IMG/VR virus record: IMGVR_UViG_3300023184_004198
Span: 1 to 64,000 of that record
DNA length: 64,000 nucleotides
Strand: one strand, 5' to 3'
The notes under the pieces are model-generated. The model was given only the letters and a program-made list of their open reading frames with translations, was not told the origin of the DNA and searched no databases. Made by a program: the position numbers and the translations under genes. This document shows positions 39,515 to 64,000 of the stretch, piece after piece; the first letter of the stretch is position 1; every line of letters begins with the position of its first letter.

Positions 39515-40654
39515 ATGAGCAACTTCTATTGTGCAGCCCCCTGGCGTGGTTTGCACATCAATCCCCGCGGTGATGTTAAAACTTGTTGTGCTGGCAACCC
39601 CAACATGTTGGGCAATCTCAATGGTCAAACAATAGAGCAAATACTCAACTCAGACTTGATGGCTGGTATACGCACCAGTTTGGCACAAGGACAAGCACAC
39701 GACTATTGTTCAAACTGTGTACGTGCAGAACGTTTTGGTGCAGACTCAGAACGTGCCTGGCACAACAATGTAAACCCTGATTTTGATTATAGCACAGCAG
39801 GCAAAGAATATCACTATCCTGTGATAGTGGATGTGCGTTGGAACACCACTTGCAATTTCAGTTGTAACTATTGTGATCCCAGTGCCAGTAGCAAATGGGC
39901 ACAACTAAAACAAGTACCATTCAAGTCAGGTACAAGACCATACTATGAACAAGTGTGTAACTTCTTGGAACAGTATCATGATCACATACATGAAGTTGCC
40001 TTGGTAGGTGGCGAACCATTATTGCTGCCTGAGAACGAACGTCTGTTAGATGTCATTCCAGAGTCTGCTATTGTTACACTGATCACAAACTTGAATGTGG
40101 ACTTGCAGAATAATCGAATATTCCGCAAACTGTCTGAACGCAACAGAGTAGGTTGGAGCATGAGCTTTGATAACATTGGTGAACGATTTGAATACGTGCG
40201 CTATGGCGGATCTTGGACCATGTTGCAAGAAAATTTAAAAGTCATAAAAAGTCTACACCGTGATCGAGGACACTGGGGCGGTGTGCATGCAGTGTACAAC
40301 ATCTACAATGCCACACGATTGTGTGAATTCAGACAATTTGTTGAGGACACCAATAACACAGTGCTGTGGCAAAACTTGTTTCAACCGGAATACCTTGATC
40401 CATTTTTGCATGGAGTGGATGTGGCTCAAGCAGCGGCTGCAGAGATACGTGAGTTATACGGCATGAACATTGCCACACCTGCAGAACGTGTTTTCTTTGA
40501 TCAAGCACTCAGCAAGTATGATTCTATAACTACTGTACAGCCCAAGATTACCGCACAGTTTAAAAGACACATACAAGCAATTGAAACACAATACCATCCC
40601 AGCACAGCAGGCGAGTTTGCAAGACTATGGCCGGAGATTGCACAATGCTTGTGA
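39515..40654 (+). CDS. Radical SAM protein with N-terminal twitch domain (#1)
   Basis: CAAPW...KTCC...CSNC at the N-terminus, then CNFSCNYC and GGEP. Confidence 0.9.
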   Translation: MSNFYCAAPWRGLHINPRGDVKTCCAGNPNMLGNLNGQTIEQILNSDLMAGIRTSLAQGQAHDYCSNCVRAERFGADSERAWHNNVNPDFDYSTAGKEYHYPVIVDVRWNTTCNFSCNYCDPSASSKWAQLKQVPFKSGTRPYYEQVCNFLEQYHDHIHEVALVGGEPLLLPENERLLDVIPESAIVTLITNLNVDLQNNRIFRKLSERNRVGWSMSFDNIGERFEYVRYGGSWTMLQENLKVIKSLHRDRGHWGGVHAVYNIYNATRLCEFRQFVEDTNNTVLWQNLFQPEYLDPFLHGVDVAQAAAAEIRELYGMNIATPAERVFFDQALSKYDSITTVQPKITAQFKRHIQAIETQYHPSTAGEFARLWPEIAQCL

Positions 40655-41184
40655 CACCGGTAGACAACGAAAACAATTTATTCCGTGTAGAGCATGCTGT
40701 GAGTGCAGAACTGGCTGCCAAAGTTGTAGCCACGGACTGGTTGTCGTTGCCTTGGCAACGCCAGGAAGGCCAAGAAAACTGGGCACGTAGACGTATAACA
40801 GACAGTGCTATACCTTGGATTGATCAGTGGCATCAAGAAATCAGCAGTCAATGGTCAACAATAGAACAATCAGTGGGTAGACAGTTGCATCCTTACTTTG
40901 GCACAGCCTGGTGGCTGGATGAACCTGGATTTACATGCAGTATGCACACTGATGGTGAGTTACCGGGCAGTATGCACCTAATTTGGCGTGGTACAGGAAC
41001 TGCATTTTATTGGCATAAAGATCCTGCGACCCTGCGCTATCAAACACCCGAACAGCCCAATGCTGGTTATGTCATGATCAATCAAGCAGACAGCATAGGA
41101 TATAGACGACTGTTGTGGCATGCCATGCTCACACCGTCAGACTCTTATAGAGTAACTTCATACACATGGATACACCCACAATGA
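40645..41184 (+). CDS. 2OG-Fe(II) oxygenase-like protein
   Basis: HxD (SMHTDG) plus a distal His (LWHAM) and YRVT in a double-stranded beta-helix pattern. Confidence 0.6.
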   Translation: MLVTPVDNENNLFRVEHAVSAELAAKVVATDWLSLPWQRQEGQENWARRRITDSAIPWIDQWHQEISSQWSTIEQSVGRQLHPYFGTAWWLDEPGFTCSMHTDGELPGSMHLIWRGTGTAFYWHKDPATLRYQTPEQPNAGYVMINQADSIGYRRLLWHAMLTPSDSYRVTSYTWIHPQ

Positions 41185-42317
41185 TTTCTTCAAGCCCTAC
41201 ATTTTGCCCTGCGCCCTGGACCAGTCTTAACATTGATCAAGCTGGTAGAGTAAGTCCTTGTTTTCACTGTGTTGAAGTGATGGGCAACGTCAAAATAAAC
41301 ACCATACAAGAAGTTATCACAGGCCCAGAATTTGTCAAGATGAAACAATCAATGGCAAGTGGAGAATGGTTTTCTGGCTGCTCATGGTGCAAACGACTAG
41401 AAGAAACCACAGGAGTCAGCGGCAGAACTACACGACGTGCAAGCAAAGAAACCATAGATCAAATAGACTCTGACCCTGAATTTTTCAAATTAGAACATCT
41501 TGTGGTCAACTGGAGCAACTTGTGCAACCTTGCTTGTGTGTATTGCAATCCTGAAACCAGCACAGCATGGCAAAGCATAAAAAAAATTCCCATCAATCAT
41601 GTCAAAAACGAACACGCAGATTTAATTGAACTGGCCCGCACACAAGGGCACAACATTCAAGGGCTGAGCTTGGGTGGTGGCGAGCCGTTGTTGCAAAAAG
41701 GACTAGAACAGTTTTTAAACTACATTGATGCCAGCAAAGTCAGTGTCATGGTCACTACCAATTTGAGCATGGACCTTGAACACAATGCCATTTATCAACG
41801 ATTAAAAACTTGGCCCAATGTAAGTTGGATGATCAGTTTTGACAATGCTGACAAAGACAAATTTGAATATGTGCGGCACGGTGCAAGCTGGGCACAATTT
41901 GTTGACAACATACAAGTCATGAAACGCGATCGACAAAAAATTCAAGCACACCCGGCATATTCAATCTATTGTGCGTTAGATTTGATGGAATATTATGATT
42001 TTTGTGTCGAACAACAGTTAGATATTTTTTGGTGCGAGTTAAATCATCCTATGGAACTGGATATGCGTCGCCAATCTAATAGACTGCGACAACTTGCAGT
42101 GGAAGAAATTGATCGCGTTGTAACCAAATACAAAGATTGTCAGCAATTGGCCACGGATGTATTGCAACGATATCGCATGACTCTCATTGACAACAGTTAT
42201 TTAAACAACAAAAATTTTATACCAAACATTTTAAAATGGCATAAAACTACTGAAGCAACTTTGAACAAAAGTACAAAATTCGTCGACTTATGGCCTTTGT
42301 TGGCTCAACAATTATAG
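41181..42317 (+). CDS. Radical SAM protein with N-terminal twitch domain (#2)
   Basis: CPAPW...PCFHC...CSWC, CNLACVYC and GGGEP. Confidence 0.9.
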   Translation: MISSSPTFCPAPWTSLNIDQAGRVSPCFHCVEVMGNVKINTIQEVITGPEFVKMKQSMASGEWFSGCSWCKRLEETTGVSGRTTRRASKETIDQIDSDPEFFKLEHLVVNWSNLCNLACVYCNPETSTAWQSIKKIPINHVKNEHADLIELARTQGHNIQGLSLGGGEPLLQKGLEQFLNYIDASKVSVMVTTNLSMDLEHNAIYQRLKTWPNVSWMISFDNADKDKFEYVRHGASWAQFVDNIQVMKRDRQKIQAHPAYSIYCALDLMEYYDFCVEQQLDIFWCELNHPMELDMRRQSNRLRQLAVEEIDRVVTKYKDCQQLATDVLQRYRMTLIDNSYLNNKNFIPNILKWHKTTEATLNKSTKFVDLWPLLAQQL

Positions 42318-42324
42318 GAATGAT

Positions 42325-43077
42325 ATGAAAAAGAATAAAACACTATGGCATTTTGGTACAAAATCAGCCGGACAAACATTTCGATGGATGCCCACAGACA
42401 CTGAAGAAAGTTTTCAAAGACTGATACAAAACGAAGAATACCTTGAGTATTTTCGTAACAAAGGCTGGTTGGATCCCGATGCTATAACATATCGTATAAA
42501 CAGTGCTGGATTCAGGTCTGAAGAGTTTGATCCGCAAGCAGCCAGCATGGTTTCACTGGGGTGCAGTTATACCATTGGTATCGGTCTGCCTGAGCAAGCC
42601 ACATGGAGTTATCTAGTATCGCAGGCCTTGGGGTTGAAAAACTATAATTTAGCATGGGGTGGCACCAGTGCAGACACTTGTTTTATGATAGCCGATCATT
42701 GGTTACCAATATTAAAACCAAAGTTGGTGGTAATGACCGCACCTCCCAAACACCGATTTGATTTGATAACAGAAAAAAATCATCACAGTCATGACACCTA
42801 TCTGCCTAGCAGTGAAATTGGTGGAGCAGATCAAGATGGTTTTGTCAAAACTTGGTTTTTGAATGATCGCAATGCTGACTTAAATAATGCACGTAATCGA
42901 TTTGCAGTAGAAGGTCTGTGTGCTAGATTGGGCATACGGTGTTTGACCTATAACGCTCATGATTGGTTTGCCAAAAGTCGAGATGAAGTAGAATATGCCA
43001 GGGATCGCATGCATGCTGGACCTCGAGGACATCAGACATTTGCAGAAAGAATATTACATGATTGCACCACCAAGTAA
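42325..43077 (+). CDS. SGNH/GDSL-like hydrolase or acyltransferase
   Basis: SLGCSYTIG block I, NLAWGGTS and a terminal DRMHAGPRGH (DxxH). Confidence 0.6.
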   Translation: MKKNKTLWHFGTKSAGQTFRWMPTDTEESFQRLIQNEEYLEYFRNKGWLDPDAITYRINSAGFRSEEFDPQAASMVSLGCSYTIGIGLPEQATWSYLVSQALGLKNYNLAWGGTSADTCFMIADHWLPILKPKLVVMTAPPKHRFDLITEKNHHSHDTYLPSSEIGGADQDGFVKTWFLNDRNADLNNARNRFAVEGLCARLGIRCLTYNAHDWFAKSRDEVEYARDRMHAGPRGHQTFAERILHDCTTK

Positions 43078-44647: not shown

Positions 44648-44650
44648 ATA
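44645..44650 (+). promoter_or_regulatory. Late promoter box TAAATA
   Basis: Overlaps the gp17 stop codon, 7 nt before ATG 44658. Confidence 0.6.
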
Positions 44651-44657
44651 CACAACT

Positions 44658-47297: not shown

Positions 47298-47337
47298 TAT
47301 AAATACACTTGACACGTAGACAAGAAGCGCATATACT
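47298..47337 (+). promoter_or_regulatory. Tandem late (TATAAATA) and sigma70 (TTGACA-N17-TATACT) promoters for gp32
   Basis: TATAAATA at 47298-47305, TTGACA at 47309-14 and TATACT at 47332-37. Confidence 0.85.
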
Positions 47338-47370
47338 ACTACAGTGTTTGCGCTTTTTTGTTTGTGTCAC

Positions 47371-47418: not shown

Positions 47419-47437
47419 TTATCAAGGAGAAAAAACT

Positions 47438-48433
47438 ATGGCATCATTAGCAGAAATCAGAGCAAGACTACAGGCAGCAGAGGGTAACAAAGGTGGGCAA
47501 TCCACCGGTGGAGACAATTCAATTTATCCACATTGGAACATGGAAGAAGGGCAAAGTGCAACACTGCGATTCCTTCCCGATGCAAATATAAAAAACACAT
47601 TTTTCTGGCAAGAACGAGCAATGATTCGTTTACCATTCGCTGGCATCAAAGGCGAAGGTGATTCTAAACAAGTGTACGTGCAAGTACCTTGTGTGGAAAT
47701 GTGGGGCGAAGCATGTCCTATCTTGGCAGAAGTACGCACCTGGTTCAAGGACAAGAGCCTTGAAGAAATGGGTCGCAAATACTGGAAGAAACGTTCATAC
47801 ATTTTCCAAGGATTTGTGCGTGAGAACCCACTGGCCGACGACAAGACACCAGAGAATCCAATCCGACGTTTCATCATCGGACCACAAATCTTTGCCACCA
47901 TCAAAGGTGCGCTGATGGATCCTGAATTGGAAGAAATGCCCACAGACACACTGCGTGGTTTGGACTTCCGTATCACTAAAACCAGCAAGGGTGGCTATGC
48001 TGATTACAGTACAAGCAAGTGGGCACGTAAAGAATCAGCATTAACTGAAGCCGAACAAGCCGCAGTTGCCGCACATGGTGCGTTTGACTTGAGCACATTC
48101 CTGCCTAAGAAGCCAGGCGATGTCGAACTCAAAGTCATCAAAGAGATGTTCGAAGCAAGTGTGGATGGACAGCCTTACGACACAGAGCGTTGGGGTCAAT
48201 ACTTCCGTCCTGCTGGTGTTCAAGCACCCGGCGGTGCCGGAGCCGCACATGCTGACGAGGATACTCCTGCGCCAGCAGCCAAGCCTGTTGCCAAAGCAGC
48301 GCCTGCTCCAGCAGACAATGGGTTTGATGACGACGACACTCCCACAGCAGCCGCACCAGTGGCCAAGCCTGCAGCCAGTGGACAAAATGCCCAGGACATC
48401 CTGGCCATGATTCGTAGCCGTCAAGCCAAGTAA
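47438..48433 (+). CDS. gp32: Single-stranded DNA-binding protein
   Basis: LRFLP...CVEMWGEACP...YWKKRSYIFQGFV...FIIGPQIF...GLDFRITKT...YADYSTSKW, with an acidic Ala/Pro tail. Confidence 0.9.
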   Translation: MASLAEIRARLQAAEGNKGGQSTGGDNSIYPHWNMEEGQSATLRFLPDANIKNTFFWQERAMIRLPFAGIKGEGDSKQVYVQVPCVEMWGEACPILAEVRTWFKDKSLEEMGRKYWKKRSYIFQGFVRENPLADDKTPENPIRRFIIGPQIFATIKGALMDPELEEMPTDTLRGLDFRITKTSKGGYADYSTSKWARKESALTEAEQAAVAAHGAFDLSTFLPKKPGDVELKVIKEMFEASVDGQPYDTERWGQYFRPAGVQAPGGAGAAHADEDTPAPAAKPVAKAAPAPADNGFDDDDTPTAAAPVAKPAASGQNAQDILAMIRSRQAK

Positions 48434-52785: not shown

Positions 52786-52792
52786 ACACAAA

Positions 52793-53793: not shown

Positions 53794-54057
53794 ATGTCAA
53801 CAGAAGTAGCAAGCGAAATTTGGGGCGAATTAAAACGATACGTTAATGTAGTAGATCGTATAGATGCTGCTGAGAGCATAGTGTCTATCTTGATTGATCA
53901 TGACTACGACGTAGAAGAAATTCGTGATGCCTTTAAAGGAGATTCAGACATTAAAAAAGCCTTGACTGCGTACTTAGACCATGACAAAGATTACGCAGAA
54001 GAAGAGGAAGAAGAGTTTGATGATGAAGACAACTACAATCAAGAAGATGATTACTGA
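53794..54057 (+). CDS. Small acidic hypothetical protein
   Basis: 87 aa with a Glu/Asp-rich C-terminus and SD AAGGA. Confidence 0.65.
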   Translation: MSTEVASEIWGELKRYVNVVDRIDAAESIVSILIDHDYDVEEIRDAFKGDSDIKKALTAYLDHDKDYAEEEEEEFDDEDNYNQEDDY

Positions 54058-55675: not shown

Positions 55676-55789
55676 ATGACCAATCAAGAACGCTGGCAAA
55701 GAGATTTGGAAGAAATAGAATTCTTTTTGCTAATATTCTTCATTGAAGCCTGGACAGCTTTTTGGTGGTGCATGAGTCATGTCAGTTAA
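55676..55789 (+). CDS. 37-aa putative single-pass membrane protein (not in the ORF track)
   Basis: MTNQERWQRDLEEIEFFLLIFFIEAWTAFWWCMSHVS exactly fills the gap between uvsY and the next late box. Confidence 0.45.
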   Translation: MTNQERWQRDLEEIEFFLLIFFIEAWTAFWWCMSHVS

Positions 55790-55792
55790 ATA
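55787..55792 (+). promoter_or_regulatory. Late promoter box TAAATA, 5 nt before ATG
   Basis: TAAATA-ttcac-ATG (ATG at 55798). Confidence 0.7.
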
Positions 55793-55797
55793 TTCAC

Positions 55798-56562
55798 ATG
55801 AAAATTGTAATAGTCACAGGTGGATTTGATCCACTACATTCTGGGCACATTGCTTATTTTGAAGCAGCCCGAGCCCTGGGCGATAGACTAGTGGTTGGTA
55901 TCAACTCCGATGCGTGGCTCACACGCAAAAAAGGTCGCCCATTCATGCCCATGGCAGAACGGCGTGCCATCATTGAAAATCTACGCATGGTAGACAAAGT
56001 AATTGAGTTTGATGACGCTGATAACACAGCCATAGATGCTATACGTGTTGCTCGTACATATTATACCATGCCCAGATCCCAATTTATATTTGCCAATGGC
56101 GGTGATCGCACAGCAGACAACATACCAGAAATGGTGTTTGATGATGTAGACTTCCAATTTGGTGTAGGTGGCGAAAACAAAATGAATTCAAGTTCATGGA
56201 TACTTATAGAATGGAAGACACCGCGAACTGATCGAGCCTGGGGATATTATCGTGTGCTACACGAAGTAGGCGCCAATACCAAACTCAAAGAACTCACTGT
56301 GATGCCCAAACAATGTTTGAGCATGCAACGCCATGACAGTCGTGCAGAATTTTGGTTTGTGGCTGAGGGAGAAGCCACTGTGTATACTTTGGATCAAGCC
56401 AGCACCGACCAGGAAGTCAAATGCAGTCTTGTCATGCACGAACACACTTTTATCAACATCAATGAATGGCATCAACTGTGTAATGAAACTGATCAACCAC
56501 TAAAGTTGATTGAAATACAATACGGCGACCGTTGTGTTGAGGAAGATATCGAACGCAGATGA
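55798..56562 (+). CDS. HIGH-family cytidylyltransferase fused to a mannose-6-phosphate isomerase type II-like cupin
   Basis: TGGFDPLHSGH...VVGINSD...FANGGDR, followed by RAWGYYRVL...LSMQRHDSRAEFWFV...HQLCN...LIEIQYG. Confidence 0.85.
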   Translation: MKIVIVTGGFDPLHSGHIAYFEAARALGDRLVVGINSDAWLTRKKGRPFMPMAERRAIIENLRMVDKVIEFDDADNTAIDAIRVARTYYTMPRSQFIFANGGDRTADNIPEMVFDDVDFQFGVGGENKMNSSSWILIEWKTPRTDRAWGYYRVLHEVGANTKLKELTVMPKQCLSMQRHDSRAEFWFVAEGEATVYTLDQASTDQEVKCSLVMHEHTFININEWHQLCNETDQPLKLIEIQYGDRCVEEDIERR

Positions 56563-57242
56563 AACCTATTCCTGTATTTGTAGGATATGATCCTAGAGAA
56601 GCCATAGCATATCACACATGCGTGAACAGCATTATTAGGCATGCCAGCCAACCTGTTGCTATCATACCTGTGGCATTGAACCTGTTTCAAGACTACGATG
56701 AAACACACACTGATGGTTCAAATCAATTTATCTACAGCCGCTTTCTTGTACCACACTTGATGGATTATCATGGATGGGCAATATTCATTGACGGTGATAT
56801 GATCTTGCGTGGGGATATTGTGGAGTTATGGGAGTGTAAAAATCTTGCCAAGGATGTCATGGTGGTCAAACATGACTACAAAACACGCATGACTGAAAAG
56901 TATCTTGGCAGTAAGAACGAAGATTATCCACGCAAGAACTGGTCAAGTGTGATCTTGTGGAACTGCAACAGTTTCCCAAATCGCAAGCTCACACCTGAGT
57001 TTATACAAAATTCAACAGGCGCAGAACTGCATAGATTTACCTGGATTGATGATGAACGCATTGGAGAACTACCTCCAGAATGGAACTGGCTGGATGTTGA
57101 ATACGACTGGAACCCCAATGCCAAACTAGTACACTATACCTTGGGCACACCTTGCTTTCATGAATTTGCTGCTCGTGGAAGTTTTTGCAACGAATGGCAC
57201 GGTGAACGAATGTTAACTACCTACTGTGAACAAAGAAAATAA
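56559..57242 (+). CDS. GT-A glycosyltransferase, GT8-like
   Basis: FVGYDPRE...FIYSRFLVP...FIDGDM...KNWSSVILWN...EWNWL...VHYTLGTP. Confidence 0.85.
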   Translation: MKPIPVFVGYDPREAIAYHTCVNSIIRHASQPVAIIPVALNLFQDYDETHTDGSNQFIYSRFLVPHLMDYHGWAIFIDGDMILRGDIVELWECKNLAKDVMVVKHDYKTRMTEKYLGSKNEDYPRKNWSSVILWNCNSFPNRKLTPEFIQNSTGAELHRFTWIDDERIGELPPEWNWLDVEYDWNPNAKLVHYTLGTPCFHEFAARGSFCNEWHGERMLTTYCEQRK

Positions 57243-57243
57243 T

Positions 57244-58206
57244 ATGGATGATGAAGAACTAGTACAACCAGAACAACACGAATTTGACCTACTGCTACCT
57301 GAAATAAAAGAAATATTTTATAATATAATAAGATACAGAGCAGATCCGGCTGGCGAATACTATGGTATAACCCTTGATACTATTGTGTCAAAGATTCGTG
57401 CTTTGGATACCAATGCCATACATGCTATTGACAGTGAATACAGATATGAAAGAAAAGGATATATGTACGATCCTATATTAGAAAGTTTTGTGCGTGGCTG
57501 CGGAGGCCAAATAACCACATGGAGTAAAACTGAAACAACTCCTACTCCTGTGGTACTACGTGGCATTACCAAACGCAAACAAATGGATGCTTGTCGTGCC
57601 ACAGGCAAAGACTTTTATTACATTGACACTGGCTATTTTGGCAATGGCAAGAAAAAATTATATCATAGAATCACAAAAAACAATGTGCAAAATTTTGGTC
57701 CTATTGTAGAACGTCCCAGTGACAGACTCGATTGCACCGGAGTCAAAATAAAAAAGGTACGTGCCGACGGCAGTCGAATACTCTTGGCACCACCCAGTCA
57801 AAAACTGTTGAATCTTTACAATATAGATCTTGAAACATGGTTAGAACAAACTCTAAGCGAAATTGGTGCCCACACCGACAGAGAAGTGGTTATACGCCGC
57901 AAGCAAGGACGCAGTACCAGAGTCAACGATGACACCATAGAAATGGCCCTGGACCAAGACATATATTGTTTGATAACTTATTCCAGTATTGCAGCCGGCG
58001 AAGCCATACTGCACGGCAAACCTGCTATTACCCTTGGACCCAATGCTGCTTCGGCAATTTGTAGCACTGCTATTTCGGAAATAGAAAATGTCAAAACACC
58101 AAGTCTTGACGAAATCTCAGCATGGGCTAGACACATAGCATATTGTCAATTCACCGAAGCAGAAATGCGTGATGGCACAGCATGGAGAATATTACAGGGT
58201 GGTTGA
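57244..58206 (+). CDS. Capsule_synth/KpsS-like GT-B protein (paralog 1)
   Basis: YYIDTGYF...ILLAPPS...VVIRRK...ITYSSIAAGEAILHGKPAI...IAYCQFT. Confidence 0.55.
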   Translation: MDDEELVQPEQHEFDLLLPEIKEIFYNIIRYRADPAGEYYGITLDTIVSKIRALDTNAIHAIDSEYRYERKGYMYDPILESFVRGCGGQITTWSKTETTPTPVVLRGITKRKQMDACRATGKDFYYIDTGYFGNGKKKLYHRITKNNVQNFGPIVERPSDRLDCTGVKIKKVRADGSRILLAPPSQKLLNLYNIDLETWLEQTLSEIGAHTDREVVIRRKQGRSTRVNDDTIEMALDQDIYCLITYSSIAAGEAILHGKPAITLGPNAASAICSTAISEIENVKTPSLDEISAWARHIAYCQFTEAEMRDGTAWRILQGG

Positions 58207-59125
58207 CGTAGTAGTTTACATCAGCAGTGTGGCCAATCCACAAAAACATTCTAGAAAAATCCAATGCTTGGAGAGTTTTGCTGAAGGTGTGCGAGCAACT
58301 GGGCACACAGTCACGGTGGAATGGGAACACAGATATACACCCAGTCGATTGGCTGTGATTTTAGGTTGGGCTACCACCAACACAGGCGGTCGTAATATCA
58401 CATTACGAAAACAAATCATACCAGAACAGCGTAGACTGGGATTCCACACCATGTGCATAGATGCCAGTTGTTGGAAATATCTTGACGATGCCAGCGGCTA
58501 TCTGCGATACAGCCTCGGTGGACCATTTTACGATCGTGCTGAGTATGCAAACAAAAACAGTGATGCTACCAAATGGATGGAGATAAGTCGTAGGTTAGGA
58601 GTGCAATTAAAACCGCCCAAGGATAATTCTTCAGGACACATCTTGATCTGCATGCAACGAGATGGCGGCTTTGCAATGAAAACCTTGGATCCCATGTCAT
58701 GGTTGCAACAAAAGGTACAACAGATTAGATCTGTCAGTTCTAGGCAAATTTATGTGCGGCCGCACCCAGGACAATACAACATGACAGACTTTGCTGCATA
58801 TACCAATAAAATGGGCAAGAGACAGAATATAGTCATACTTGAGCCTACTCACAGCAGATTAATTGACAACTTACAAGGCGCACATTCAGCGGTATTTTTC
58901 AACAGTTCGGCTAGTGTGGCAGCGGCATGCGAAGGCATACCTGTGTTTGCAGACGACGCCAGCTGTGTGGCCTGGGCAGTGGCCAACAAGGATGTCAGTA
59001 AAATTGAAACGCCTGATGTATTTGCCAGGGAACAGTGGATGTATGATCTAGCAGCCGCACATTGGAGTGACGATGATGCTAGAGCTGGCCGTATCTATCA
59101 AAAGTTTTTGCCGTATCTTACTTAA
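58199..59125 (+). CDS. Capsule_synth/KpsS-like GT-B protein (paralog 2)
   Basis: ILICMQ...YVRPHPG...VFFNSSASVAAACEGIPVF...LAAAHWS; GTG start. Confidence 0.55.
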   Translation: MVDVVVYISSVANPQKHSRKIQCLESFAEGVRATGHTVTVEWEHRYTPSRLAVILGWATTNTGGRNITLRKQIIPEQRRLGFHTMCIDASCWKYLDDASGYLRYSLGGPFYDRAEYANKNSDATKWMEISRRLGVQLKPPKDNSSGHILICMQRDGGFAMKTLDPMSWLQQKVQQIRSVSSRQIYVRPHPGQYNMTDFAAYTNKMGKRQNIVILEPTHSRLIDNLQGAHSAVFFNSSASVAAACEGIPVFADDASCVAWAVANKDVSKIETPDVFAREQWMYDLAAAHWSDDDARAGRIYQKFLPYLT

Positions 59126-59131
59126 TAGTAA

Positions 59132-59812
59132 TTATCTATGATTTACTTCCACAAATTCATACTTACCAGTAAATGATTCCGGAATGTCTTGCCAAGTGCC
59201 AGACAATTGGTCACTTATCCACTGCTCGTAGTAAGGACGGTCTTTGAACCACCAGAACAAATCACTGCCGGACCAGTCTGAGTAAAAACTACGAAAGAAC
59301 GCTCTATCTCGAGGCACACAAAAATATGCAGGATCGTATATGGTCTTTTTGCCTTTGGCCACACGTTGAAAGTTTAGCCCAATAAAACAAAACTTTTCAG
59401 CATGCCCTTGCAAAGTTTCACGCACCCAGGTCATGTCATCGTCGGGTATGCTGTTTAGCACCTGTGTGCATATCACCCCGTCAAATTTTGCATCTGGCGG
59501 TGGTGGTGTTTCAAATTCTGGCACACAAGGATCATAACAATAGACACTGACACCTAGATATTGATCAAACGTCTGCCATTGATCGGGAGCCAGTTCCATT
59601 CCTTGATTGCCTCCATATGGCAATCGTTCTTTGTATTGCAGTCCTTTGCCGCATCCGTAGTCTAAAATATTTTTTGCTCCATAACGATCTACCAGATCCT
59701 TGATACACTTTTGGTATTTTACAACATCATAACCAGCCCAACTTTTGTTGCTGGCTTGAAACTCACGACCCAGTCGCACTGATTCTTCATAATATTGGCT
59801 AGGGCTTGTAAT
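59132..59812 (-). CDS. Class I SAM-dependent methyltransferase; probable ATT start
   Basis: ILDYGCGKG, YDPCVPEF and FDGVICTQVL. The frame extends 11 codons upstream of GTG 59779 to an ATT behind SD GGAG. Confidence 0.75.
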   Translation of the reverse strand: MTSPSQYYEESVRLGREFQASNKSWAGYDVVKYQKCIKDLVDRYGAKNILDYGCGKGLQYKERLPYGGNQGMELAPDQWQTFDQYLGVSVYCYDPCVPEFETPPPPDAKFDGVICTQVLNSIPDDDMTWVRETLQGHAEKFCFIGLNFQRVAKGKKTIYDPAYFCVPRDRAFFRSFYSDWSGSDLFWWFKDRPYYEQWISDQLSGTWQDIPESFTGKYEFVEVNHR

Positions 59813-59813
59813 T

Positions 59814-60500
59814 TTATTTCTCCAAATTTATTGTGGTAGATAATTTTTTGATATTATCATCTTTCGTATACAGCGGATGCAATCTTGCAATAGTAGGACG
59901 GCAATGGCTCACGGACATAATATTTGTGCCTAGCAACCAGTCAGTTGGAAGAAAACCATTGGCTTTGACCCAATCAATCAATCTTGCCGCGGCATGTGGT
60001 TTGATGATGTAAGCGTAGGCCCCAAACGTGTTCCAGCCAGCGGCAGTTTCATGATTGCCACCACCGTGTTCACCATTTTGAATGGTCCAGATTGATGATG
60101 CATCAGTTGAGTGTGTGTCCAACCAGTGTTCATACGAATCGCTGTAAGGATTTCCAGAATCTAATTTAATGACATCATCAAACAAGTCTAAAATGTTGTC
60201 TGGCAGTGGCTTGATAAAATATCCATCATGTTCTAGCACAAGATATGGGATATTGTGTTTGACACAATCCAGCCACAAGTAATAATGACTTAAAAAACAA
60301 CCAATTATTCCCACTCGCCCTTTTTTGAATTTTCCCAAGGGTCGTAGACCCAACAAATCCAAATGACCGTCTGCATCAAACCCGTTTATAGCATCAAATA
60401 CTTCAACAGATATCCCAAACTTTGCGGCCTGTTCTATGCAATCCTGTGCTACTGTTTGAGACAGCTGATGATTTTGTAACACTATTATTTTTGTTCGCAT
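59814..60500 (-). CDS. Glycosyltransferase family 25-like
   Basis: VEVFDAING...IGCFLSHYYLW...YLVLEHDG...GAYAYIIKP...PTDW. Confidence 0.85.
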   Translation of the reverse strand: MRTKIIVLQNHQLSQTVAQDCIEQAAKFGISVEVFDAINGFDADGHLDLLGLRPLGKFKKGRVGIIGCFLSHYYLWLDCVKHNIPYLVLEHDGYFIKPLPDNILDLFDDVIKLDSGNPYSDSYEHWLDTHSTDASSIWTIQNGEHGGGNHETAAGWNTFGAYAYIIKPHAAARLIDWVKANGFLPTDWLLGTNIMSVSHCRPTIARLHPLYTKDDNIKKLSTTINLEK

Positions 60501-61141
60501 GTGTATATCCAATCAGATTCGTTCAGTGTATCAACATGTGTGTAACCCAAGGATGCCAGTAAGTCTTTGGTTTTTTGATTGATGTTGTCTCCAAATCTAT
60601 TCAGATATTTACTTGGAGGTGGATCCCACATTTCAATGGCTATAACTGGTTTGAATTTTTTGATAGTAGACACAGCGCCGCTGAGAGCAAAATATTCATA
60701 GCCTTCTATATCCAAGTGTATCAAATCACATGCTGTCAATCCCAAATTATCTATCAAATAGATTGGATAAATCCCATCACCGTTGATAAAACTTTTTCCT
60801 CTACTTTTGGATTTGATATGAAGATCGACCAATCCAGGATCACTACCAAGACATCCTTGAGATTTAACTATATTTCCTTCAGGGCAATTCATTGCTAAAC
60901 AATAGAAATTTAGCCAGTCTGGTTCAAAAGTATAAACAGCATTAAAAATTTTTGAATATTGTTTTGGATACATACCGCAGTTGCCGCCAGCTTGCACCAC
61001 AACTTTTTTGTCATCAACGTAACTGGATATTCGGCCAGGCAAATCAAAATTTTCTAATAAAAATTTCCAAGTATTGGTATCATCTTTTGGCCAATACCAT
61101 CCTTCTTTAATTTCTACTAGATCAAGTGCAGTTATGGCCAC
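60485..61141 (-). CDS. FkbM-family methyltransferase
   Basis: VVQAGGNCG...VYTFEPD...LIHLDIEGYE...KPVIAIE. Confidence 0.85.
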   Translation of the reverse strand: MAITALDLVEIKEGWYWPKDDTNTWKFLLENFDLPGRISSYVDDKKVVVQAGGNCGMYPKQYSKIFNAVYTFEPDWLNFYCLAMNCPEGNIVKSQGCLGSDPGLVDLHIKSKSRGKSFINGDGIYPIYLIDNLGLTACDLIHLDIEGYEYFALSGAVSTIKKFKPVIAIEMWDPPPSKYLNRFGDNINQKTKDLLASLGYTHVDTLNESDWIYTCEQK

Positions 61142-61782
61142 CCCATGATCCAGTCGTCACGTATTTGCTCCAGTTTGATCATGCCCCAGGCTTGCAATAA
61201 TTCTACTGCTGCAAACTGACCGTATTGCTTGCTGTAAGCATCATGTGGTTTTTGTTCTATCACTATCACAGGTCTACAACGGCGAATGGTTTGTTCAGCG
61301 CCTTGCAAGATACGATACTCGTATCCCTCGCAGTCAATTTTGATATAACTGACATCATGAAAATTCAATGTATCCAGTCGAACAACTTGCACATCGCCAG
61401 TGCCCATGGTAGCAGGATCTAGATGGCTGTGCCCAGAATTTTTCTCCGTGATGATCATGGTTCCTTGTGTGTCTTGATCACCTAAGGCAATTGGCTGAAC
61501 TTCAAAGTTCGTGCCTCGCACATTTTGTTCCAGGCATTCTCTAAACAAGGCCACTGGTTCAAATGCTATCACACGAGCAAAACTGCCAACAAAGTCACGA
61601 CTCCACAAGCCCACATTGGCACCAATGTCTAGGGCCAGGTCTCGTTTTTTGCACAGTTCAATGCTTCGACGTCGCACAGCAACTTGATATTCAGCCGGGA
61701 GACCTTTGTCTACACTTTTCCTTAACATCTTTGGAAGATGTGTTTCAAAGTCCGGGAATTTCCATCCATAATGCTCAACCAT
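61132..61782 (-). CDS. FkbM-family methyltransferase
   Basis: LDIGANVG...VIAFEP...IKIDCEGYE...RPVIVIE. Confidence 0.9.
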   Translation of the reverse strand: MVEHYGWKFPDFETHLPKMLRKSVDKGLPAEYQVAVRRRSIELCKKRDLALDIGANVGLWSRDFVGSFARVIAFEPVALFRECLEQNVRGTNFEVQPIALGDQDTQGTMIITEKNSGHSHLDPATMGTGDVQVVRLDTLNFHDVSYIKIDCEGYEYRILQGAEQTIRRCRPVIVIEQKPHDAYSKQYGQFAAVELLQAWGMIKLEQIRDDWIMGWP

Positions 61783-62578
61783 TTAATATCTCCTCAGTTT
61801 GTTTAATTATACGTTCTGCTGAACCGTTCTTGAATTCGTCTATGTGAAACTGCGCATAGGCCAAATGATACGCCCAGGCCAACACTTGATCTCGATCTGG
61901 AAACCATGGATTGTCTATGTGAGTCAAGTCTGTGTTGCTGACAGGTTTGGCAGCATTTGACGGTGCTAATGCAAACACAGGCACACCTGCTAAGATGGCT
62001 TCTGTGCCTGCTATTGAGTTGAATGTTACTACAGCATGTACATCATCCAAGGCTTTTTCCACACGATTGGTTTTTCTGTCTGTTCGACTTCGATTGCGTT
62101 CACGGATCACAATGGGCCTATCAGTGTGTTGTTTGATAGTGGCAACGGTTTCTGCCAACCAAGTATCCAGCTCTATGTCGTAAAACTTACAAGGCTTTTC
62201 ATCTGGAGCAACAATCAGTATTGTGCTGCCGCGTCGACGATTGGCTGCTTCTAATCCCAGTTGGTTCCAACGATCACTGGGCCGCGGTATGACTTGATCA
62301 TGTTGCAAATTGTTGGGCACTATTCTATGCCAGTGTTTCCATCCATGCGGATTTTTGAAACTGGGACGATTGCCCAAGTAACCTGAGTCCATGTATCTAA
62401 ATGGTCTGTTATCTGCCCAGCACTGTTTGATGATTTTGTGCTTCATTATGCCACGTAGCATGAGTGGCTCTGTGCTGTCCTCGTAACGCCATGACTCCAA
62501 TGGAGTAGACTCAACACCAAGTCCATGTGCATACATGTCGATGTATTCGTCATCACCATTCTTGCTCAAAAATATCAT
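61775..62578 (-). CDS. Capsule_synth/KpsS-like GT-B protein (paralog 3)
   Basis: RYMDSGYL...ILIVAP...IVIRER...VVTFNSIAGTEAILAGVPVF...LAYAQFH. Confidence 0.55.
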   Translation of the reverse strand: MIFLSKNGDDEYIDMYAHGLGVESTPLESWRYEDSTEPLMLRGIMKHKIIKQCWADNRPFRYMDSGYLGNRPSFKNPHGWKHWHRIVPNNLQHDQVIPRPSDRWNQLGLEAANRRRGSTILIVAPDEKPCKFYDIELDTWLAETVATIKQHTDRPIVIRERNRSRTDRKTNRVEKALDDVHAVVTFNSIAGTEAILAGVPVFALAPSNAAKPVSNTDLTHIDNPWFPDRDQVLAWAYHLAYAQFHIDEFKNGSAERIIKQTEEILNG

Positions 62579-63357
62579 CGCCAGTATGTTTCTTTTCTTG
62601 GTGCCACTAGATCTGACAAGTTGCTGCGGCCACTGCCTTTGCGTTTGCCTTTAAGATGATCAATATATCCTCCCCAATCACAGTTGATCAAGGGGTGACC
62701 CTCGCCCATTTGCAAGTGTGCTGTCCAATTGAGTTCTGCCAGTCCACTGCGAGCTTTTACCGCATCAAACACAAAACTGTCGTGCCATTCTTTCAGAGTA
62801 AAGATGCCATTCTCAGCGTCATCATACATGCGTTGAAACTCTGCCAAGAACTTTTGCACAGGTTCTCTGGTTAGATTCATACCGTATAGGCCACATTCAC
62901 TGAATTTGTTACTGCGACCTGCATAACACAGTTCACGATCTGCAGGAAAGAACTGATCCAATCGTTGCACAGTGATTGGTGAGTGGCATACCATGTCAGC
63001 GTCCATCCAAATCAACCAGTCTGTTTGGGCATGTTTGGCAGCATGAAATATAGCATACACTTTGTGACTGAATCTCACTGCTTGCCATTTGAATGATTTA
63101 CGTTCGCTACCAGGGCCATTATCGCCATTGGCCTTGGGCACGTTGCGCCATTTGTTTTTGAATGCCACAAGATCAGCACTTGCCCCTTCCAAGTCCAACA
63201 CTTGTAAATTGGGCGCTGATGTTTTAACACGACACCCTTCGGCGTATACTCGGAGCATGACATCCCGGGGCCATGTTTGTAAAAAAGTGTCAATCATGCG
63301 CCGACCGTAGGTATTGTAACCGTCGGCATTAAAAGTGGTAACTACAGTGTATTTCAT
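62575..63357 (-). CDS. GT-A glycosyltransferase-like protein
   Basis: VVTTFN...RFSHKVYAI...LIWMDAD...SECGLYGMN...WHDSFVFD...DHLKG. ATG 63357 lies 5 nt after TAAATA. Confidence 0.75.
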   Translation of the reverse strand: MKYTVVTTFNADGYNTYGRRMIDTFLQTWPRDVMLRVYAEGCRVKTSAPNLQVLDLEGASADLVAFKNKWRNVPKANGDNGPGSERKSFKWQAVRFSHKVYAIFHAAKHAQTDWLIWMDADMVCHSPITVQRLDQFFPADRELCYAGRSNKFSECGLYGMNLTREPVQKFLAEFQRMYDDAENGIFTLKEWHDSFVFDAVKARSGLAELNWTAHLQMGEGHPLINCDWGGYIDHLKGKRKGSGRSNLSDLVAPRKETYWR

Positions 63358-63362
63358 AAGCG

Positions 63363-63368
63363 TATTTA
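63363..63368 (-). promoter_or_regulatory. Late promoter box TAAATA, 5 nt before ATG
   Basis: Minus strand TAAATA-cgctt-ATG (ATG at 63357). Confidence 0.7.
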
Positions 63369-63370
63369 CA

Positions 63371-64000
63371 GTGATCAAATCCATAGCCTATTTTCCTGCC
63401 CAGTGTGCGCTAAATTCCAAACCTGTAATGGCAGCGTTTTTGGATTGTTGTCAAGCCGCAGGTATACAAACACAAGAGAATTCCCGGACTGCTGATGCCG
63501 CAGTGATTTGGTCAGTGTTGTGGCACGGTAGGATGCGGCCTAATCAACAGGTGTACGAACACTATCGCAGCCAAAACAAGCCTGTGATTGTGATAGATGT
63601 TGGTGCGCTGTATCGTGGGCAGACTTGGAAATTGGCAGTTAATCATATCACTCGGGATGGGTATTATGGACATTATGACAATTTGGATTGGGGTCGACCC
63701 AGACAATTGCAAATCAGTTTGGCCACACAAGTCAATCCAGGACCAGAAATCATCATTGCCGCACAACATCAAAAAAGTCTACAGGTTGCTGGAATTGGTA
63801 ACATGGAATCATGGGTGTTGATGCAAATTCAACAACTACGTAACTCTACTGATCGTCCCATACGCATACGTGCGCACCCACGTAGTCCACTACGCATGCC
63901 ATACATACCCGACAACGTCACAATAGAAGTTGCACAGCCTGTGGCCAACACTTACGACAACTTTGACATGCACTTCAACTGTCATGCTGTGGTAAATCAC
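63371..64000 (+). CDS. Capsule_synth/KpsS-like GT-B protein (paralog 4), 3'-truncated by the window; not in the ORF track
   Basis: Open frame from GTG: MIKSIAYFPAQCALNSK...IVIDVGAL...IIIAAQH...IRIRAHPRS...HAVVNH, with no stop before the window end. Confidence 0.65.
   Translation, partial: MIKSIAYFPAQCALNSKPVMAAFLDCCQAAGIQTQENSRTADAAVIWSVLWHGRMRPNQQVYEHYRSQNKPVIVIDVGALYRGQTWKLAVNHITRDGYYGHYDNLDWGRPRQLQISLATQVNPGPEIIIAAQHQKSLQVAGIGNMESWVLMQIQQLRNSTDRPIRIRAHPRSPLRMPYIPDNVTIEVAQPVANTYDNFDMHFNCHAVVNH

What the first reader, a model, noticed from the sequence alone, without database searches (positions are those of the whole stretch)
39515..64000. Candidate phage-encoded, late-expressed virion glycosylation and glycan-tailoring system
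Seen: about 20 sugar- or small-molecule-modifying genes lie in this stretch. They are six radical SAMs, a 2OG-Fe(II)-like, SGNH-like, sulfotransferase-like and SDR gene, a cytidylyltransferase-cupin, three methyltransferases, GT8-like, GT25-like and GT-A genes, and four KpsS-like GT-B genes. Two more GT-like genes (1317-2465, 3458-4045) sit beside the capsid and fibre genes. The operon heads at 2465, 39515, 55798 and 63357 each have a T4-type TAAATA late box 4-5 nt before the ATG. Established: T4-type late promoters fire after replication starts, FkbM/GT8/GT25/KpsS families act on surface glycans, and some phages and giant viruses glycosylate virions. Inference: this is a full build-and-decorate glycan pathway for the virion (anti-adsorption-barrier or anti-antibody camouflage, or adhesion), larger than any phage example I can recall.
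Basis: partly seen in the sequence, partly recalled or inferred. Interest (0 to 1): 0.9.

Follow-up and report, generated by a model that had tools for sequence, protein, structure and literature searches.

The report
Jumbo-phage sugar island and radical-SAM cassettes
An uncultured 212-kb freshwater phage carries swappable cassettes of sugar-building and radical-SAM enzymes wedged between its core genes; they may sugar-coat the virus particle, but that is unproven and similar gene sets are already known in large aquatic phages.

Summary
The window is the late/replication backbone of an uncultured jumbo myophage; TerL is 51% identical to Pseudomonas phage PA5oct. TerL, a virion protein, gp32-like SSB, UvsX and UvsY lie between the 'sugar' genes. 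Three kinds of accessory module sit in hot spots that are empty in some close relatives.

1. A hypervariable ~9.6-kb glycan island (55.8-65.3 kb). It holds a nucleotidyltransferase-cupin, GT8, GT25, a GT2-like gene, three methyltransferases and four KpsC/WbbB-like Kdo-transferase paralogs. All are soluble and no export genes are present.
2. Cassettes of the uncharacterised N-terminal-twitch radical-SAM family NF033640: five in the window, one split gene, and a seventh beyond the window.
3. A lineage-conserved TPR+GT-B gene beside the capsid gene, built like OGT/SPINDLY protein O-glycosyltransferases.

The TAAATA boxes are real, conserved in relatives and shared with fibre, sheath and tube genes. 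Their spacing implies leaderless mRNAs. Four radical-SAM genes instead sit in the SSB-UvsX-UvsY unit, behind a sigma-70-like promoter.

Virion glycosylation is the best reading (~0.4), and host-envelope remodelling is close behind. The claim 'larger than any phage example' is wrong.

The parts
1317..2465 (-). TPR + GT-B (GT9-like) glycosyltransferase, tail-to-tail with the major capsid gene (57-1253). Candidate protein O-glycosyltransferase.
   Evidence: Pfam finds TPR repeats plus Glyco_transf_9. The AF2 model (pLDDT 78) matches SPINDLY/OGT at E 1e-10 to 1e-6 and WaaF/WaaC at TM about 0.5. It is conserved in at least 183 IMG/VR loci and lies next to the capsid gene in 49/51.
2470..2475 (-). 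TAAATA box 4 nt before the ATG of the TPR-GT gene.
   Evidence: A box is present upstream in 80/80 relatives.
3458..4045 (+). 195-aa conserved gene in the fibre operon. Possible Maf/CST-like (CMP-sugar) transferase; weak evidence.
   Evidence: Matches phrog_30607 of unknown function. Orthologs give subthreshold MptE-like (4/14) and CST-I (2/14) hits. No PDB sequence hit.
39505..39510 (+). TAAATA box 4 nt before the ATG of rSAM1. It heads the unit rSAM1-u185-rSAM2-u250-TerL-virion protein.
39515..40654 (+). rSAM1, an N-terminal-twitch radical SAM (NF033640).
   Evidence: (207.7 bits, cutoff 170).
40627..41184 (+). 185-aa protein with an invariant HxD...H motif. Possible 2OG-Fe(II)/cupin oxygenase.
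   Evidence: Alignment A4. No Pfam, NCBIfam, PHROG or PDB hit.
41166..42317 (+). rSAM2, an N-terminal-twitch radical SAM.
   Evidence: 195.7 bits.
42325..43077 (+). 250-aa SGNH/GDSL-like hydrolase candidate.
   Evidence: Pfam Lipase_GDSL_2 at E=0.0025, below the cutoff. GCSYT and DxxH motifs are visible in the sequence.
47309..47337 (+). Sigma-70-like promoter TTGACA-17-TATACT upstream of SSB, with TATAAATA at 47298-47305 just 5' of it.
   Evidence: Conserved in 18/33 relatives.
48433..49053 (+). 206-aa protein with sulfotransferase-like loops (motif-level reading only).
   Evidence: Sequence and alignment A3. No database hit.
49040..50017 (+). rSAM3, an N-terminal-twitch radical SAM (divergent).
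   Evidence: 140.2 bits, below the cutoff of 170.
50014..50589 (+). 191-aa short-chain dehydrogenase-like protein (TGxxxGIG and YxxxK motifs).
   Evidence: Weak Pfam Epimerase and adh_short hits. Start codon located.
50589..51746 (+). rSAM4, the best match to NF033640.
   Evidence: 248 bits. Orthologs at 72-100% identity occur in more than 120 clusters.
52775..53491 (+). rSAM5s, a radical-SAM core without the N-terminal twitch domain.
53472..53792 (+). 106-aa Cys-rich ORF, possibly a SPASM/twitch-like partner supplied as a separate protein.
   Evidence: Sequence. The two-gene arrangement is conserved in L078 and L067.
54057..55235 (+). rSAM6, an N-terminal-twitch radical SAM (divergent).
   Evidence: 161.6 bits, just below the cutoff.
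55787..55792 (+). TAAATA box 5 nt before the ATG of the nucleotidyltransferase-cupin gene.
   Evidence: TAAATA-N5-ATG is conserved in 21/25 relatives.
55798..56562 (+). Cytidylyltransferase-like (RfaE domain II-like) + MannoseP_isomer cupin fusion. Candidate maker of a nucleotide-sugar.
   Evidence: It is among the most conserved island genes, found in 25 loci, and also follows UvsY in the distant relative L282.
56559..57242 (+). GT8-family glycosyltransferase.
57226..58206 (+). KpsC/WbbB-like GT-B paralog (u326). Has no HP motif.
   Evidence: Family alignment A2.
58169..59125 (+). KpsC/WbbB-like GT-B paralog (u318). HP motif at residue 199.
59132..59779 (-). Class-I SAM methyltransferase.
59814..60512 (-). 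GT25-family glycosyltransferase.
60485..61141 (-). FkbM-type methyltransferase.
61132..61782 (-). FkbM-type methyltransferase.
61775..62578 (-). KpsC/WbbB-like paralog (u267).
62575..63357 (-). GT2-like GT-A glycosyltransferase. The start is probably 63357; gene callers use 63384.
63363..63368 (-). TAAATA box 5 nt before the ATG at 63357.
63428..64000 (+). N-terminal part of a fourth KpsC/WbbB-like paralog (264 aa in full), cut by the window end. The island continues for about 1.3 kb more.
   Evidence: L003 extension. It is a member of alignment A2.

Best explanation
The stretch is a set of independent accessory cassettes inserted at hot spots in the conserved backbone of an abundant, uncultured, PA5oct-like freshwater jumbo myophage. 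The backbone order is TerL, virion protein, SSB, UvsX, UvsY, clamp-loader-like ATPase, helicase.

The cassette that really builds a glycan is the island between UvsY and the ATPase (55.8 to about 65.3 kb).
- One enzyme activates a sugar-phosphate (nucleotidyltransferase-cupin).
- GT8, GT25 and GT2-like enzymes add hexose-type residues.
- Four KpsC/WbbB-like enzymes add Kdo-type ulosonic acids, presumably from host CMP-Kdo.
- Three methyltransferases cap the sugars.

All of these enzymes are soluble and no lipid-carrier or export step is encoded. Both operons start at conserved TAAATA-N5-ATG heads of the kind that also head the fibre, sheath and tube genes.

Most likely (inference), a short methylated acidic oligosaccharide is assembled late in infection directly on virion proteins. 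The lineage-conserved TPR+GT-B enzyme encoded beside the capsid gene would be the protein-directed, priming transferase.

The N-terminal-twitch radical-SAM cassettes carry oxygenase-, SGNH-, sulfotransferase- and SDR-like partners. They are separate tailoring modules whose substrate is unknown. They may modify the same sugars or proteins, but nothing ties them to the island.
For: **Shown**
- Domain content of the island.
- KpsC/KrkA/WbbB fold of the paralog family.
- OGT/SPINDLY-like TPR+GT-B architecture with a GT9-like catalytic half.
- TPR-GT is conserved in at least 183 loci and lies beside the capsid gene in 49/51.
- TAAATA boxes are concentrated upstream of gene starts: 15 observed against 0.6-2.3 expected. 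They are conserved at TPR-GT (80/80), u502 (57/57), fibre (15/15) and the nucleotidyltransferase-cupin gene (21/25).
- No TM-like segment occurs in any of 36 proteins, and no Wzx/Wzy/ABC/ligase-type domains were found.
- The island is hypervariable while the backbone is conserved.

**Precedent**
- Virion glycosylation in mycobacteriophages (Freeman 2023, cited in PMC12619734).
- The same KpsC-like fold occurs as four paralogs in Tetraselmis virus 1, a giant virus.
Against: - No acceptor is identified, and nothing in the sequence shows that capsid or fibre proteins are modified.
- Characterised KpsC/KpsS/WbbB, GT8 and GT25 enzymes act on lipid-linked LPS or capsule intermediates, not on proteins (established knowledge).
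- The island is absent from some close relatives (L074) whose capsid is nearly identical, so it is dispensable.
- The capsid gene itself has no box within 45 nt.
- 'Late' is inferred from the motif alone. The sigma factor was not looked for and there are no expression data.
- Two of the three complete in-window KpsC-like paralogs lack the HP motif (sequences).
Confidence: 0.4

Rival explanations
1. Host-envelope remodelling. The island's soluble transferases act at the cytoplasmic face of the inner membrane on host lipid A-core, undecaprenyl-linked O-antigen or lyso-PG-linked capsule primers, and host machinery exports the product. This alters or caps the cell-surface glycan. It could block superinfection, or stop progeny from sticking to infected cells and debris.
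For: - The closest characterised relatives of GT8, GT25 and KpsC/WbbB all work on LPS, LOS or capsule (Pfam descriptions; PDB hits).
- WbbB-type Kdo addition and methylation are known O-antigen chain terminators (established knowledge).
- The lack of export genes also fits hijacking of host export.
- Island hypervariability would mirror host serotype diversity.
- Similar clusters in cyanophages are conventionally read this way (PMC12801897).
- A distant relative carries a porin gene near its sugar genes.
Against: - Late-type promoter heads shared with virion genes leave little time for new LPS to reach the surface of a cell that is about to lyse.
- This reading does not explain a lineage-conserved TPR+GT-B gene beside the capsid gene.
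- No experimental support exists for the cyanophage clusters either.
Confidence: 0.28
2. No common pathway. The stretch is a collection of unrelated accessory genes that happen to accumulate at permissive hot spots. The radical-SAM cassettes make or modify a small molecule, nucleotide or protein unrelated to any glycan. The island genes serve more than one target.
For: - Cassettes vary independently among relatives: radical-SAM genes without the island, the island without radical-SAM genes, or neither.
- They lie in different transcription units with different promoter types.
- The radical-SAM paralogs are only 19-27% identical to each other, and the family is huge and mostly found on phage-like metagenomic contigs.
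- PA5oct has homing endonucleases at equivalent positions.
Against: - Inside the island the genes are tightly packed in two convergent operons with a coherent make-transfer-methylate logic, and the head pair (nucleotidyltransferase-cupin + GT8) is conserved.
- The radical-SAM partner genes (oxygenase-, esterase-, sulfotransferase- and SDR-like) are typical sugar or small-molecule tailoring enzymes.
Confidence: 0.2
3. DNA hypermodification. The transferases and tailoring enzymes decorate phage DNA bases with sugars to evade restriction or CRISPR, as T4 glucosyltransferases and other phage DNA glycosyltransferases do.
For: - The cassettes lie among replication and recombination genes: SSB, UvsX, UvsY, ATPase, helicase and a dNMP kinase at 24532-25182.
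- Phage glycosyltransferases that build multi-sugar DNA glycans are known (Pyle 2024, cited in PMC12619734).
- Radical-SAM enzymes take part in thymidine hypermodification (own knowledge).
Against: - The island heads carry late-type boxes shared with virion genes, whereas DNA modification must accompany replication.
- No hydroxymethylase or DNA-glycosyltransferase family (GT63/GT72) was detected in the window.
- GT8, GT25, KpsC-like and FkbM sets are typical of surface glycans.
- The cassettes are absent in close relatives.
Confidence: 0.07

Closest known systems
Mycobacteriophage virion glycosylation (Che8/Corndog-type; Freeman et al. 2023, cited in PMC12619734)
   Same: Phage-encoded glycosyltransferases, with methyltransferases in some cases, lie near structural genes and are proposed to decorate capsid or tail proteins. 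Like those genes, the island here is accessory and variable.
   Different: - The host type differs: the Kdo/LPS-type enzymes here point to a Gram-negative host.
- The gene set is much larger and uses different GT families (KpsC-like, GT8, GT25, TPR-GT9-like).
- No glycan has been demonstrated.
- The mycobacteriophage systems contain no radical-SAM genes (own knowledge).
LPS/cell-wall gene clusters of T4-like cyanophages (P-SSM2, S-SCSM1, S-SCSM2R; PMC12801897)
   Same: Large aquatic myophages carry 13 or more glycosyltransferases, sugar-nucleotide enzymes, GT2 and GT25 genes and occasional radical-SAM genes in hyperplastic regions. Function is untested in both cases.
   Different: - The phage lineage differs (PA5oct-like backbone).
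- Here there is a KpsC-like paralog family, a TPR-GT next to the capsid gene, a seven-copy N-terminal-twitch radical-SAM family, and conserved late-type leaderless heads.
Retaining beta-Kdo transferases KpsC/KpsS (GT107), WbbB (GT99) and KrkA
   Same: Same GT-B-like fold: the top 22 PDB matches, at E 3e-7 to 1.5e-4. The profile matches the WbbB HP-motif region at E=0.02. The HP motif is present in the u318 subfamily.
   Different: - Only 8-14% identical.
- Two paralog subfamilies lack the HP motif.
- Conservation of the catalytic Asp was not established.
- The phage proteins are single-domain and are encoded without any capsule or O-antigen export genes.
TPR + GT-B protein O-glycosyltransferases (OGT/SPINDLY, GT41) and GT9 heptosyltransferases
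   Same: An N-terminal TPR array is followed by a GT-B catalytic domain. Best Foldseek matches are SPINDLY, bacterial OGTs and human OGT. The catalytic half superposes on WaaF and WaaC, and Pfam gives a Glyco_transf_9 hit.
   Different: - Much shorter (382 aa, about 3 TPRs).
- No GT41 intervening domain.
- Catalytic residues, donor and acceptor are untested.
- Model confidence is moderate (pLDDT 78).
Giant-virus glycan clusters (Mimivirus fibrils, chlorovirus capsid glycans) and the Tetraselmis virus 1 KpsC-like paralogs
   Same: These are virus-encoded, lineage-variable clusters that make methylated glycans on virions (own knowledge). The same KpsC-like fold occurs as four paralogs in Tetraselmis virus 1.
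   Different: These are eukaryotic viruses with no sequence-level relationship beyond the fold. Their virion glycans are demonstrated experimentally; none is demonstrated here.
NCBIfam NF033640 'twitch domain-containing radical SAM protein'
   Same: All five full-length paralogs align end to end with the model, and three pass its cutoff.
   Different: - The family has no characterised member in the searchable literature.
- Here it is expanded to seven copies per genome and partnered with tailoring enzymes.

Membership tests
NF033640 N-terminal-twitch radical SAM | Whole-protein score above the curated cutoff (170 bits) | tested here: met
   rSAM1, rSAM2 and rSAM4 score 207.7, 195.7 and 248.0 bits. 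rSAM3 and rSAM6 fall below the cutoff at 140.2 and 161.6 bits, although NF033640 is still their best hit and the match is full-length.
NF033640 N-terminal-twitch radical SAM | CX3CX2C radical-SAM cluster motif preceded by an N-terminal Cys-rich SPASM/twitch domain | tested here: met
   C121, C125 and C128 are invariant, as are N-terminal C13, C69 and C72 and the GGEP motif, in the six-paralog alignment. Pfam places SPASM at residues about 6-80 and Radical_SAM after it.
Retaining beta-Kdo transferases (GT99/GT107: WbbB, KpsC, KpsS) | Characteristic GT-B-like fold | tested here: met
   The u318 model (pLDDT 93) has its top 22 PDB hits among KpsC, KrkA and WbbB.
Retaining beta-Kdo transferases (GT99/GT107: WbbB, KpsC, KpsS) | HP motif that contacts the CMP donor | tested here: inconclusive
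   The motif is present in u318 (VRPHPG, residue 199) and in the family consensus. It is replaced in u326 (IRRKQG) and u267 (IRERNR).
Retaining beta-Kdo transferases (GT99/GT107: WbbB, KpsC, KpsS) | Catalytic Asp nucleophile, and use of CMP-Kdo as donor | not tested
   No residue-level structural alignment was available. Donor use needs an enzyme assay.
GT41-type protein O-glycosyltransferases (OGT/SPINDLY) | N-terminal TPR array fused to a GT-B catalytic domain | tested here: met
   Pfam TPR hits. The PDB profile search matches OGT and SPINDLY TPRs. Foldseek top hits are SPINDLY and OGT.
GT41-type protein O-glycosyltransferases (OGT/SPINDLY) | GT41 catalytic-domain signature and a protein acceptor | tested here: inconclusive
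   The catalytic half scores as GT9 in Pfam and superposes best on WaaF and WaaC at TM about 0.5. The acceptor cannot be tested in silico.
T4-type late promoter | TATAAATA at -10, with no -35 element | tested here: inconclusive
   The 6-mer TAAATA is strongly enriched upstream of gene starts and is conserved. The full octamer occurs only 3 times, and the preceding two bases vary.
T4-type late promoter | Phage gp55/gp33-type late sigma and co-activator; expression after replication begins | not tested
   These genes are not in the window and the rest of the 212-kb contig was not examined. There are no expression data.
Phage virion glycosylation system (mycobacteriophage type) | Glycan demonstrated on capsid or tail proteins and dependent on the phage glycosyltransferases | not testable with these tools
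   Needs virions or heterologous expression.
Complete surface-polysaccharide pathway (Wzx/Wzy or ABC type) | Initiating phosphoglycosyltransferase, flippase or transporter, and polymerase or ligase | tested here: not met
   No such Pfam domains were found. No TM-like segment occurs in any of the 36 proteins from 39.5 kb to 10 kb past the window end.
Phage DNA glycosylation (T4 alpha/beta-GT type) | GT63/GT72-type DNA glucosyltransferase plus a hydroxymethyl-pyrimidine pathway | tested here: not met
   None was detected among the window proteins scanned. The rest of the genome was not examined.

The most novel reading that the evidence does not exclude
The radical-SAM cassettes and the glycan island cooperate. 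N-terminal-twitch radical-SAM enzymes, with their oxygenase, esterase, sulfotransferase-like and SDR partners, would remodel ulosonic-acid or heptose-type sugars. KpsC-like, GT8 and GT25 enzymes would then place these sugars on capsid or fibre proteins primed by the TPR-GT. The result would be a serotype-like, hypervariable glycan coat on an abundant freshwater jumbo phage. This would be the first virion glycosylation system in a phage of Gram-negative bacteria and the first function for NF033640.
Probability: 0.12. Interest if true: 0.85.

Novelty: new variant of a known kind. Interest (0 to 1): 0.55.

Why it matters
Large aquatic phages often carry many sugar-modifying genes whose targets have never been shown. 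This lineage is abundant: more than 600 UvsX matches in IMG/VR, the 80 best at 82-98% identity.

It offers three unusually testable handles:
- A conserved TPR-glycosyltransferase encoded next to a nearly invariant capsid gene.
- A compact, export-free glycan island with conserved promoter heads.
- A multi-copy, uncharacterised radical-SAM family.

If the virion is the target, phage glycan coats would extend beyond actinobacteriophages, and island hypervariability would point to selection on the particle surface. If host LPS is the target, this would be a case of late-expressed surface editing by a lytic phage. Either result would assign chemistry to a radical-SAM family with thousands of metagenomic members.

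Tried and rejected
**Searches that found nothing useful**
- Nucleotide search against cultured phages: no match.
- tblastn of rSAM4 against cultured phages gave one weak hit, Ralstonia phage RsoM2USA. Against plasmids it gave none.

**Reaching bacterial N_Twi_rSAM genes to read their neighbourhoods failed**
- The six-paralog alignment was too divergent to seed a genome scan.
- The single-protein scan found nothing.
- The three-paralog scan found only a syntenic phage contig binned in a marine Legionellales MAG.
- The exhaustive profile search returned metagenomic, apparently phage-borne proteins.
- The family's cellular context therefore remains unknown.

**Other dead ends**
- Literature searches for N-terminal twitch/SPASM enzymes found nothing specific.
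- The 'moraphage' paper (PMC12619734) describes a different lineage.
- Profile searches of u206, u185 and u195 against PDB sequences found nothing.

**Ideas considered and set aside**
- The radical-SAM genes as decaying or selfish inserts. They keep all cluster motifs, and full-length orthologs exist at 60-90% identity.
- Ser/Thr/Asn richness of the fibres as evidence for glycosylation. This is ordinary fibre composition.

Full report
**What the window is**

The window is the first 64 kb of IMG/VR contig 3300023184_004198, which is 212,614 bp long. It has no nucleotide match among cultured phages. TerL is 51% identical to Pseudomonas jumbo phage PA5oct and 49% identical to Sinorhizobium phage Phosso.

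PHROG and Pfam scans identify the following backbone genes:
- major capsid protein (57-1253);
- fibre and virion proteins (5605-18775);
- sheath stabiliser, head-tail adaptor, exonuclease and dNMP kinase;
- tail sheath (25586-28882) and two tube proteins;
- TerL (about 43058-44647) and an 879-aa virion protein;
- gp32-like SSB (47438-48433), UvsX (51730-52785) and a UvsY-like mediator (55222-55674).

The order matches PA5oct and Phosso, which lack the radical-SAM and sugar genes at these positions.

**Checking the observation**

- Five genes belong to NCBIfam NF033640, radical-SAM enzymes whose SPASM/twitch domain is N-terminal to the CX3CX2C core. Three score above the curated cutoff and two just below. 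The paralogs share only 19-27% identity but keep all cluster cysteines and the GGEP motif.
- A sixth radical-SAM gene is core-only and is followed by a Cys-rich 106-aa ORF. This arrangement is conserved in two relatives.
- A seventh N-terminal-twitch copy lies beyond the window, next to a DEAD-box helicase.
- The cytidylyltransferase-cupin fusion, GT8, GT25, GT2-like gene, two FkbM methyltransferases and one class-I methyltransferase are all supported by Pfam.
- The 'KpsS-like' genes had no Pfam hit, but they form one paralog family with their relatives (alignment A2). The family profile touches the HP-motif region of the beta-Kdo transferase WbbB at E=0.02. An AF2 model (pLDDT 93) has its top 22 PDB matches all among KpsC, KrkA and WbbB.
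- The 2OG-oxygenase, SGNH, sulfotransferase and SDR calls rest on motifs or subthreshold hits only.

**The TAAATA boxes**

All four named operon heads have TAAATA 4-5 nt before the ATG.

| Measure | Value |
|---|---|
| TAAATA copies, both strands | 32 |
| Copies within 45 nt upstream of the 58 curated gene starts | 15 |
| Expected if copies were spread uniformly | 0.6 |
| Mean (maximum) in shuffled upstream regions | 2.3 (9) |

Two spacing classes exist. Ten genes have a 4-7 nt spacer with no room for a ribosome-binding site. Five genes have a 17-25 nt spacer with a Shine-Dalgarno sequence; these include the fibre, sheath and tube genes.

The box is conserved in relatives despite divergence of the flanking sequence:
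- TPR-GT 80/80;
- u502 57/57;
- fibre 15/15;
- nucleotidyltransferase-cupin 21/25 as TAAATA-N5-ATG.

Sharing the box with bona fide structural genes supports co-regulation. Reading the short-spacer class as leaderless late mRNAs is my inference. The full T4 octamer is not enriched, and the late sigma factor was not sought.

The SSB gene is preceded by a strong sigma-70-like promoter, TTGACA-17-TATACT, conserved in 18/33 relatives. It also has a TATAAATA just upstream. The unit SSB-u206-rSAM3-SDR-rSAM4-UvsX-rSAM5-u87-rSAM6-UvsY is therefore not simply 'late'.

**Comparative genomics**

UvsX retrieves more than 600 IMG/VR stretches, and the 80 best are 82-98% identical. A tblastn matrix shows that TerL, the virion protein, SSB, UvsX, a small acidic protein and UvsY are always present, while the radical-SAM and sugar genes come and go.

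| Hot spot | Empty or minimal | Occupied | This window |
|---|---|---|---|
| SSB to UvsX | 60-83 bp in 15/53 loci | window-type 3.1-3.3 kb cassette in about 8 | 3.3 kb |
| UvsX to UvsY | minimal in 39/70 | one radical-SAM gene in 28/70 | 2.4 kb |
| UvsY to ATPase | 1.1-1.6 kb in 3/5 | about 8 kb in 2/5 | 9.6 kb |

Locus L074, from a 152-kb contig, has no radical-SAM or sugar gene in this stretch at all. Cassettes occur in different combinations, so they are modular accessory insertions and not one fixed pathway. The island extends about 1.3 kb past the window end, through the rest of the fourth KpsC-like gene, a 249-aa ORF and a 69-aa ORF.

**Outside the finding's coordinates**

The gene at 1317-2465 is the most informative one.
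- It combines TPR repeats with a GT9-like GT-B domain.
- Its model matches SPINDLY and OGT, which are TPR+GT-B protein O-glycosyltransferases, and its catalytic half superposes on WaaF and WaaC.
- It is conserved in at least 183 loci. It lies tail-to-tail with the capsid gene in 49/51 and head-to-head with the fibre operon in 77/77.

The 195-aa gene at 3458-4045 is also conserved. Its orthologs give only subthreshold MptE-like and CST-I hits.

**Mechanism**

None of the 36 proteins from 39.5 kb to 10 kb past the window end has a TM-like segment. No initiating transferase, flippase, polymerase, transporter or ligase domain was found. The island can therefore only decorate an acceptor that is already available in the cytoplasm.

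Three facts make virion proteins the most likely acceptor, at about 0.4:
- the protein-glycosyltransferase-like architecture of the TPR-GT;
- its fixed position beside the capsid gene;
- the promoter heads shared with virion genes.

The main rival, at about 0.28, is remodelling of lipid-linked host LPS or capsule intermediates. The known biochemistry of GT8, GT25 and KpsC/WbbB favours this rival, as does the conventional reading of the cyanophage clusters (PMC12801897). DNA glycosylation is unlikely, at about 0.07.

The radical-SAM cassettes cannot be tied to the island. Their family has 6,507 clusters (at 50% identity) at E<=1e-30 and includes many tandem fusions. Every one of the few high-scoring hits whose source or genomic context I examined was metagenomic or phage-borne. 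I found no characterised member.

**Novelty**

Comparable or larger sugar-gene sets are known in T4-like cyanophages (PMC12801897). A marine T4-like genome carries 12 radical-SAM genes (PMC5332604). KpsC-like folds occur in Tetraselmis virus 1, Caulobacter phage CcrColossus and uncultured phages. Virion glycosylation has precedent in mycobacteriophages.

The new points here are:
- the conserved TPR-GT next to the capsid gene;
- the KpsC-like paralog family inside a hot-spot island;
- the seven-copy N-terminal-twitch radical-SAM expansion with tailoring partners;
- the conserved leaderless-type heads.

I rate this a new variant of a known kind, with interest 0.55.

Noticed in passing
window 2470-2475(-), 21957-21962(-), 38682-38687, 39505-39510, 44645-44650, 55787-55792, 63363-63368(-) and others: Ten genes have TAAATA only 4-7 nt before the ATG, with no Shine-Dalgarno sequence. 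This implies leaderless late mRNAs in a jumbo phage. Five structural genes instead use TAAATA-N17-25 with a Shine-Dalgarno sequence.
   Followed up: partly
window 47298-47337: TATAAATA is followed immediately by a near-consensus sigma-70 promoter (TTGACA-17-TATACT) upstream of the gp32-like SSB gene. It is conserved in 18/33 relatives, which suggests dual early/late control as for T4 gene 32.
   Followed up: partly
window 38693-39499: A DNA/RNA non-specific endonuclease (Pfam E=1e-37) with an N-terminal signal peptide and a TAAATA-N5 head. It looks like a secreted or periplasmic nuclease made late in infection.
   Followed up: no
window ~3415-3457: A conserved GC-rich stem-loop plus T-run (CCTCCCTG...CAGGGAGGATTTTTTT) directly abuts the ATG of the 195-aa gene. 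It looks like a terminator between u266 and u195.
   Followed up: no
window 52775-53792: A radical-SAM core gene is followed, with a 20-nt overlap, by a separate Cys-rich 106-aa ORF that looks like a detached SPASM/twitch domain. The two-gene form is conserved in L078 and L067.
   Followed up: partly
proteins P0121-P0269: The N-terminal-twitch radical-SAM profile hits 6,507 clusters (at 50% identity) at E<=1e-30. Many are ~800-aa tandem double fusions, and one 5,830-aa protein has 23 partial matches.
   Followed up: no
L282 (NCBI MAG contig JBFDRU010000058.1, 128 kb): A more distant relative keeps UvsX, UvsY and, a few genes on, the nucleotidyltransferase-cupin. Near a solitary N-terminal-twitch radical-SAM gene it carries an S-adenosylhomocysteine hydrolase, a porin, a TauD oxygenase, a hexapeptide transferase and an NAD-epimerase.
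   Followed up: no
L169 (PBLX01000007.1, 'Legionellales bacterium' MAG): A 42-kb contig binned as a marine Legionellales MAG is syntenic with this phage, from TerL through to rSAM3-SDR-rSAM4-UvsX. It is phage DNA in a bacterial bin and only weak evidence for the host.
   Followed up: partly
window 32770-36222: A 1150-aa protein rich in Lys, Asp, Glu and Gly causes the AT skew of 0.30. Only a ~65-residue segment matches PHROGs of unknown function.
   Followed up: no
window 18772-19251(-): A NUDIX hydrolase gene lies among the tail genes. It could act on nucleotide-sugars or nucleotides.
   Followed up: no
L134, L124, L136 versus window 1253-1317: In some relatives 1.7-3.1 kb of extra DNA lies between the TPR-GT and the capsid gene, which marks another accessory hot spot.
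   Followed up: no
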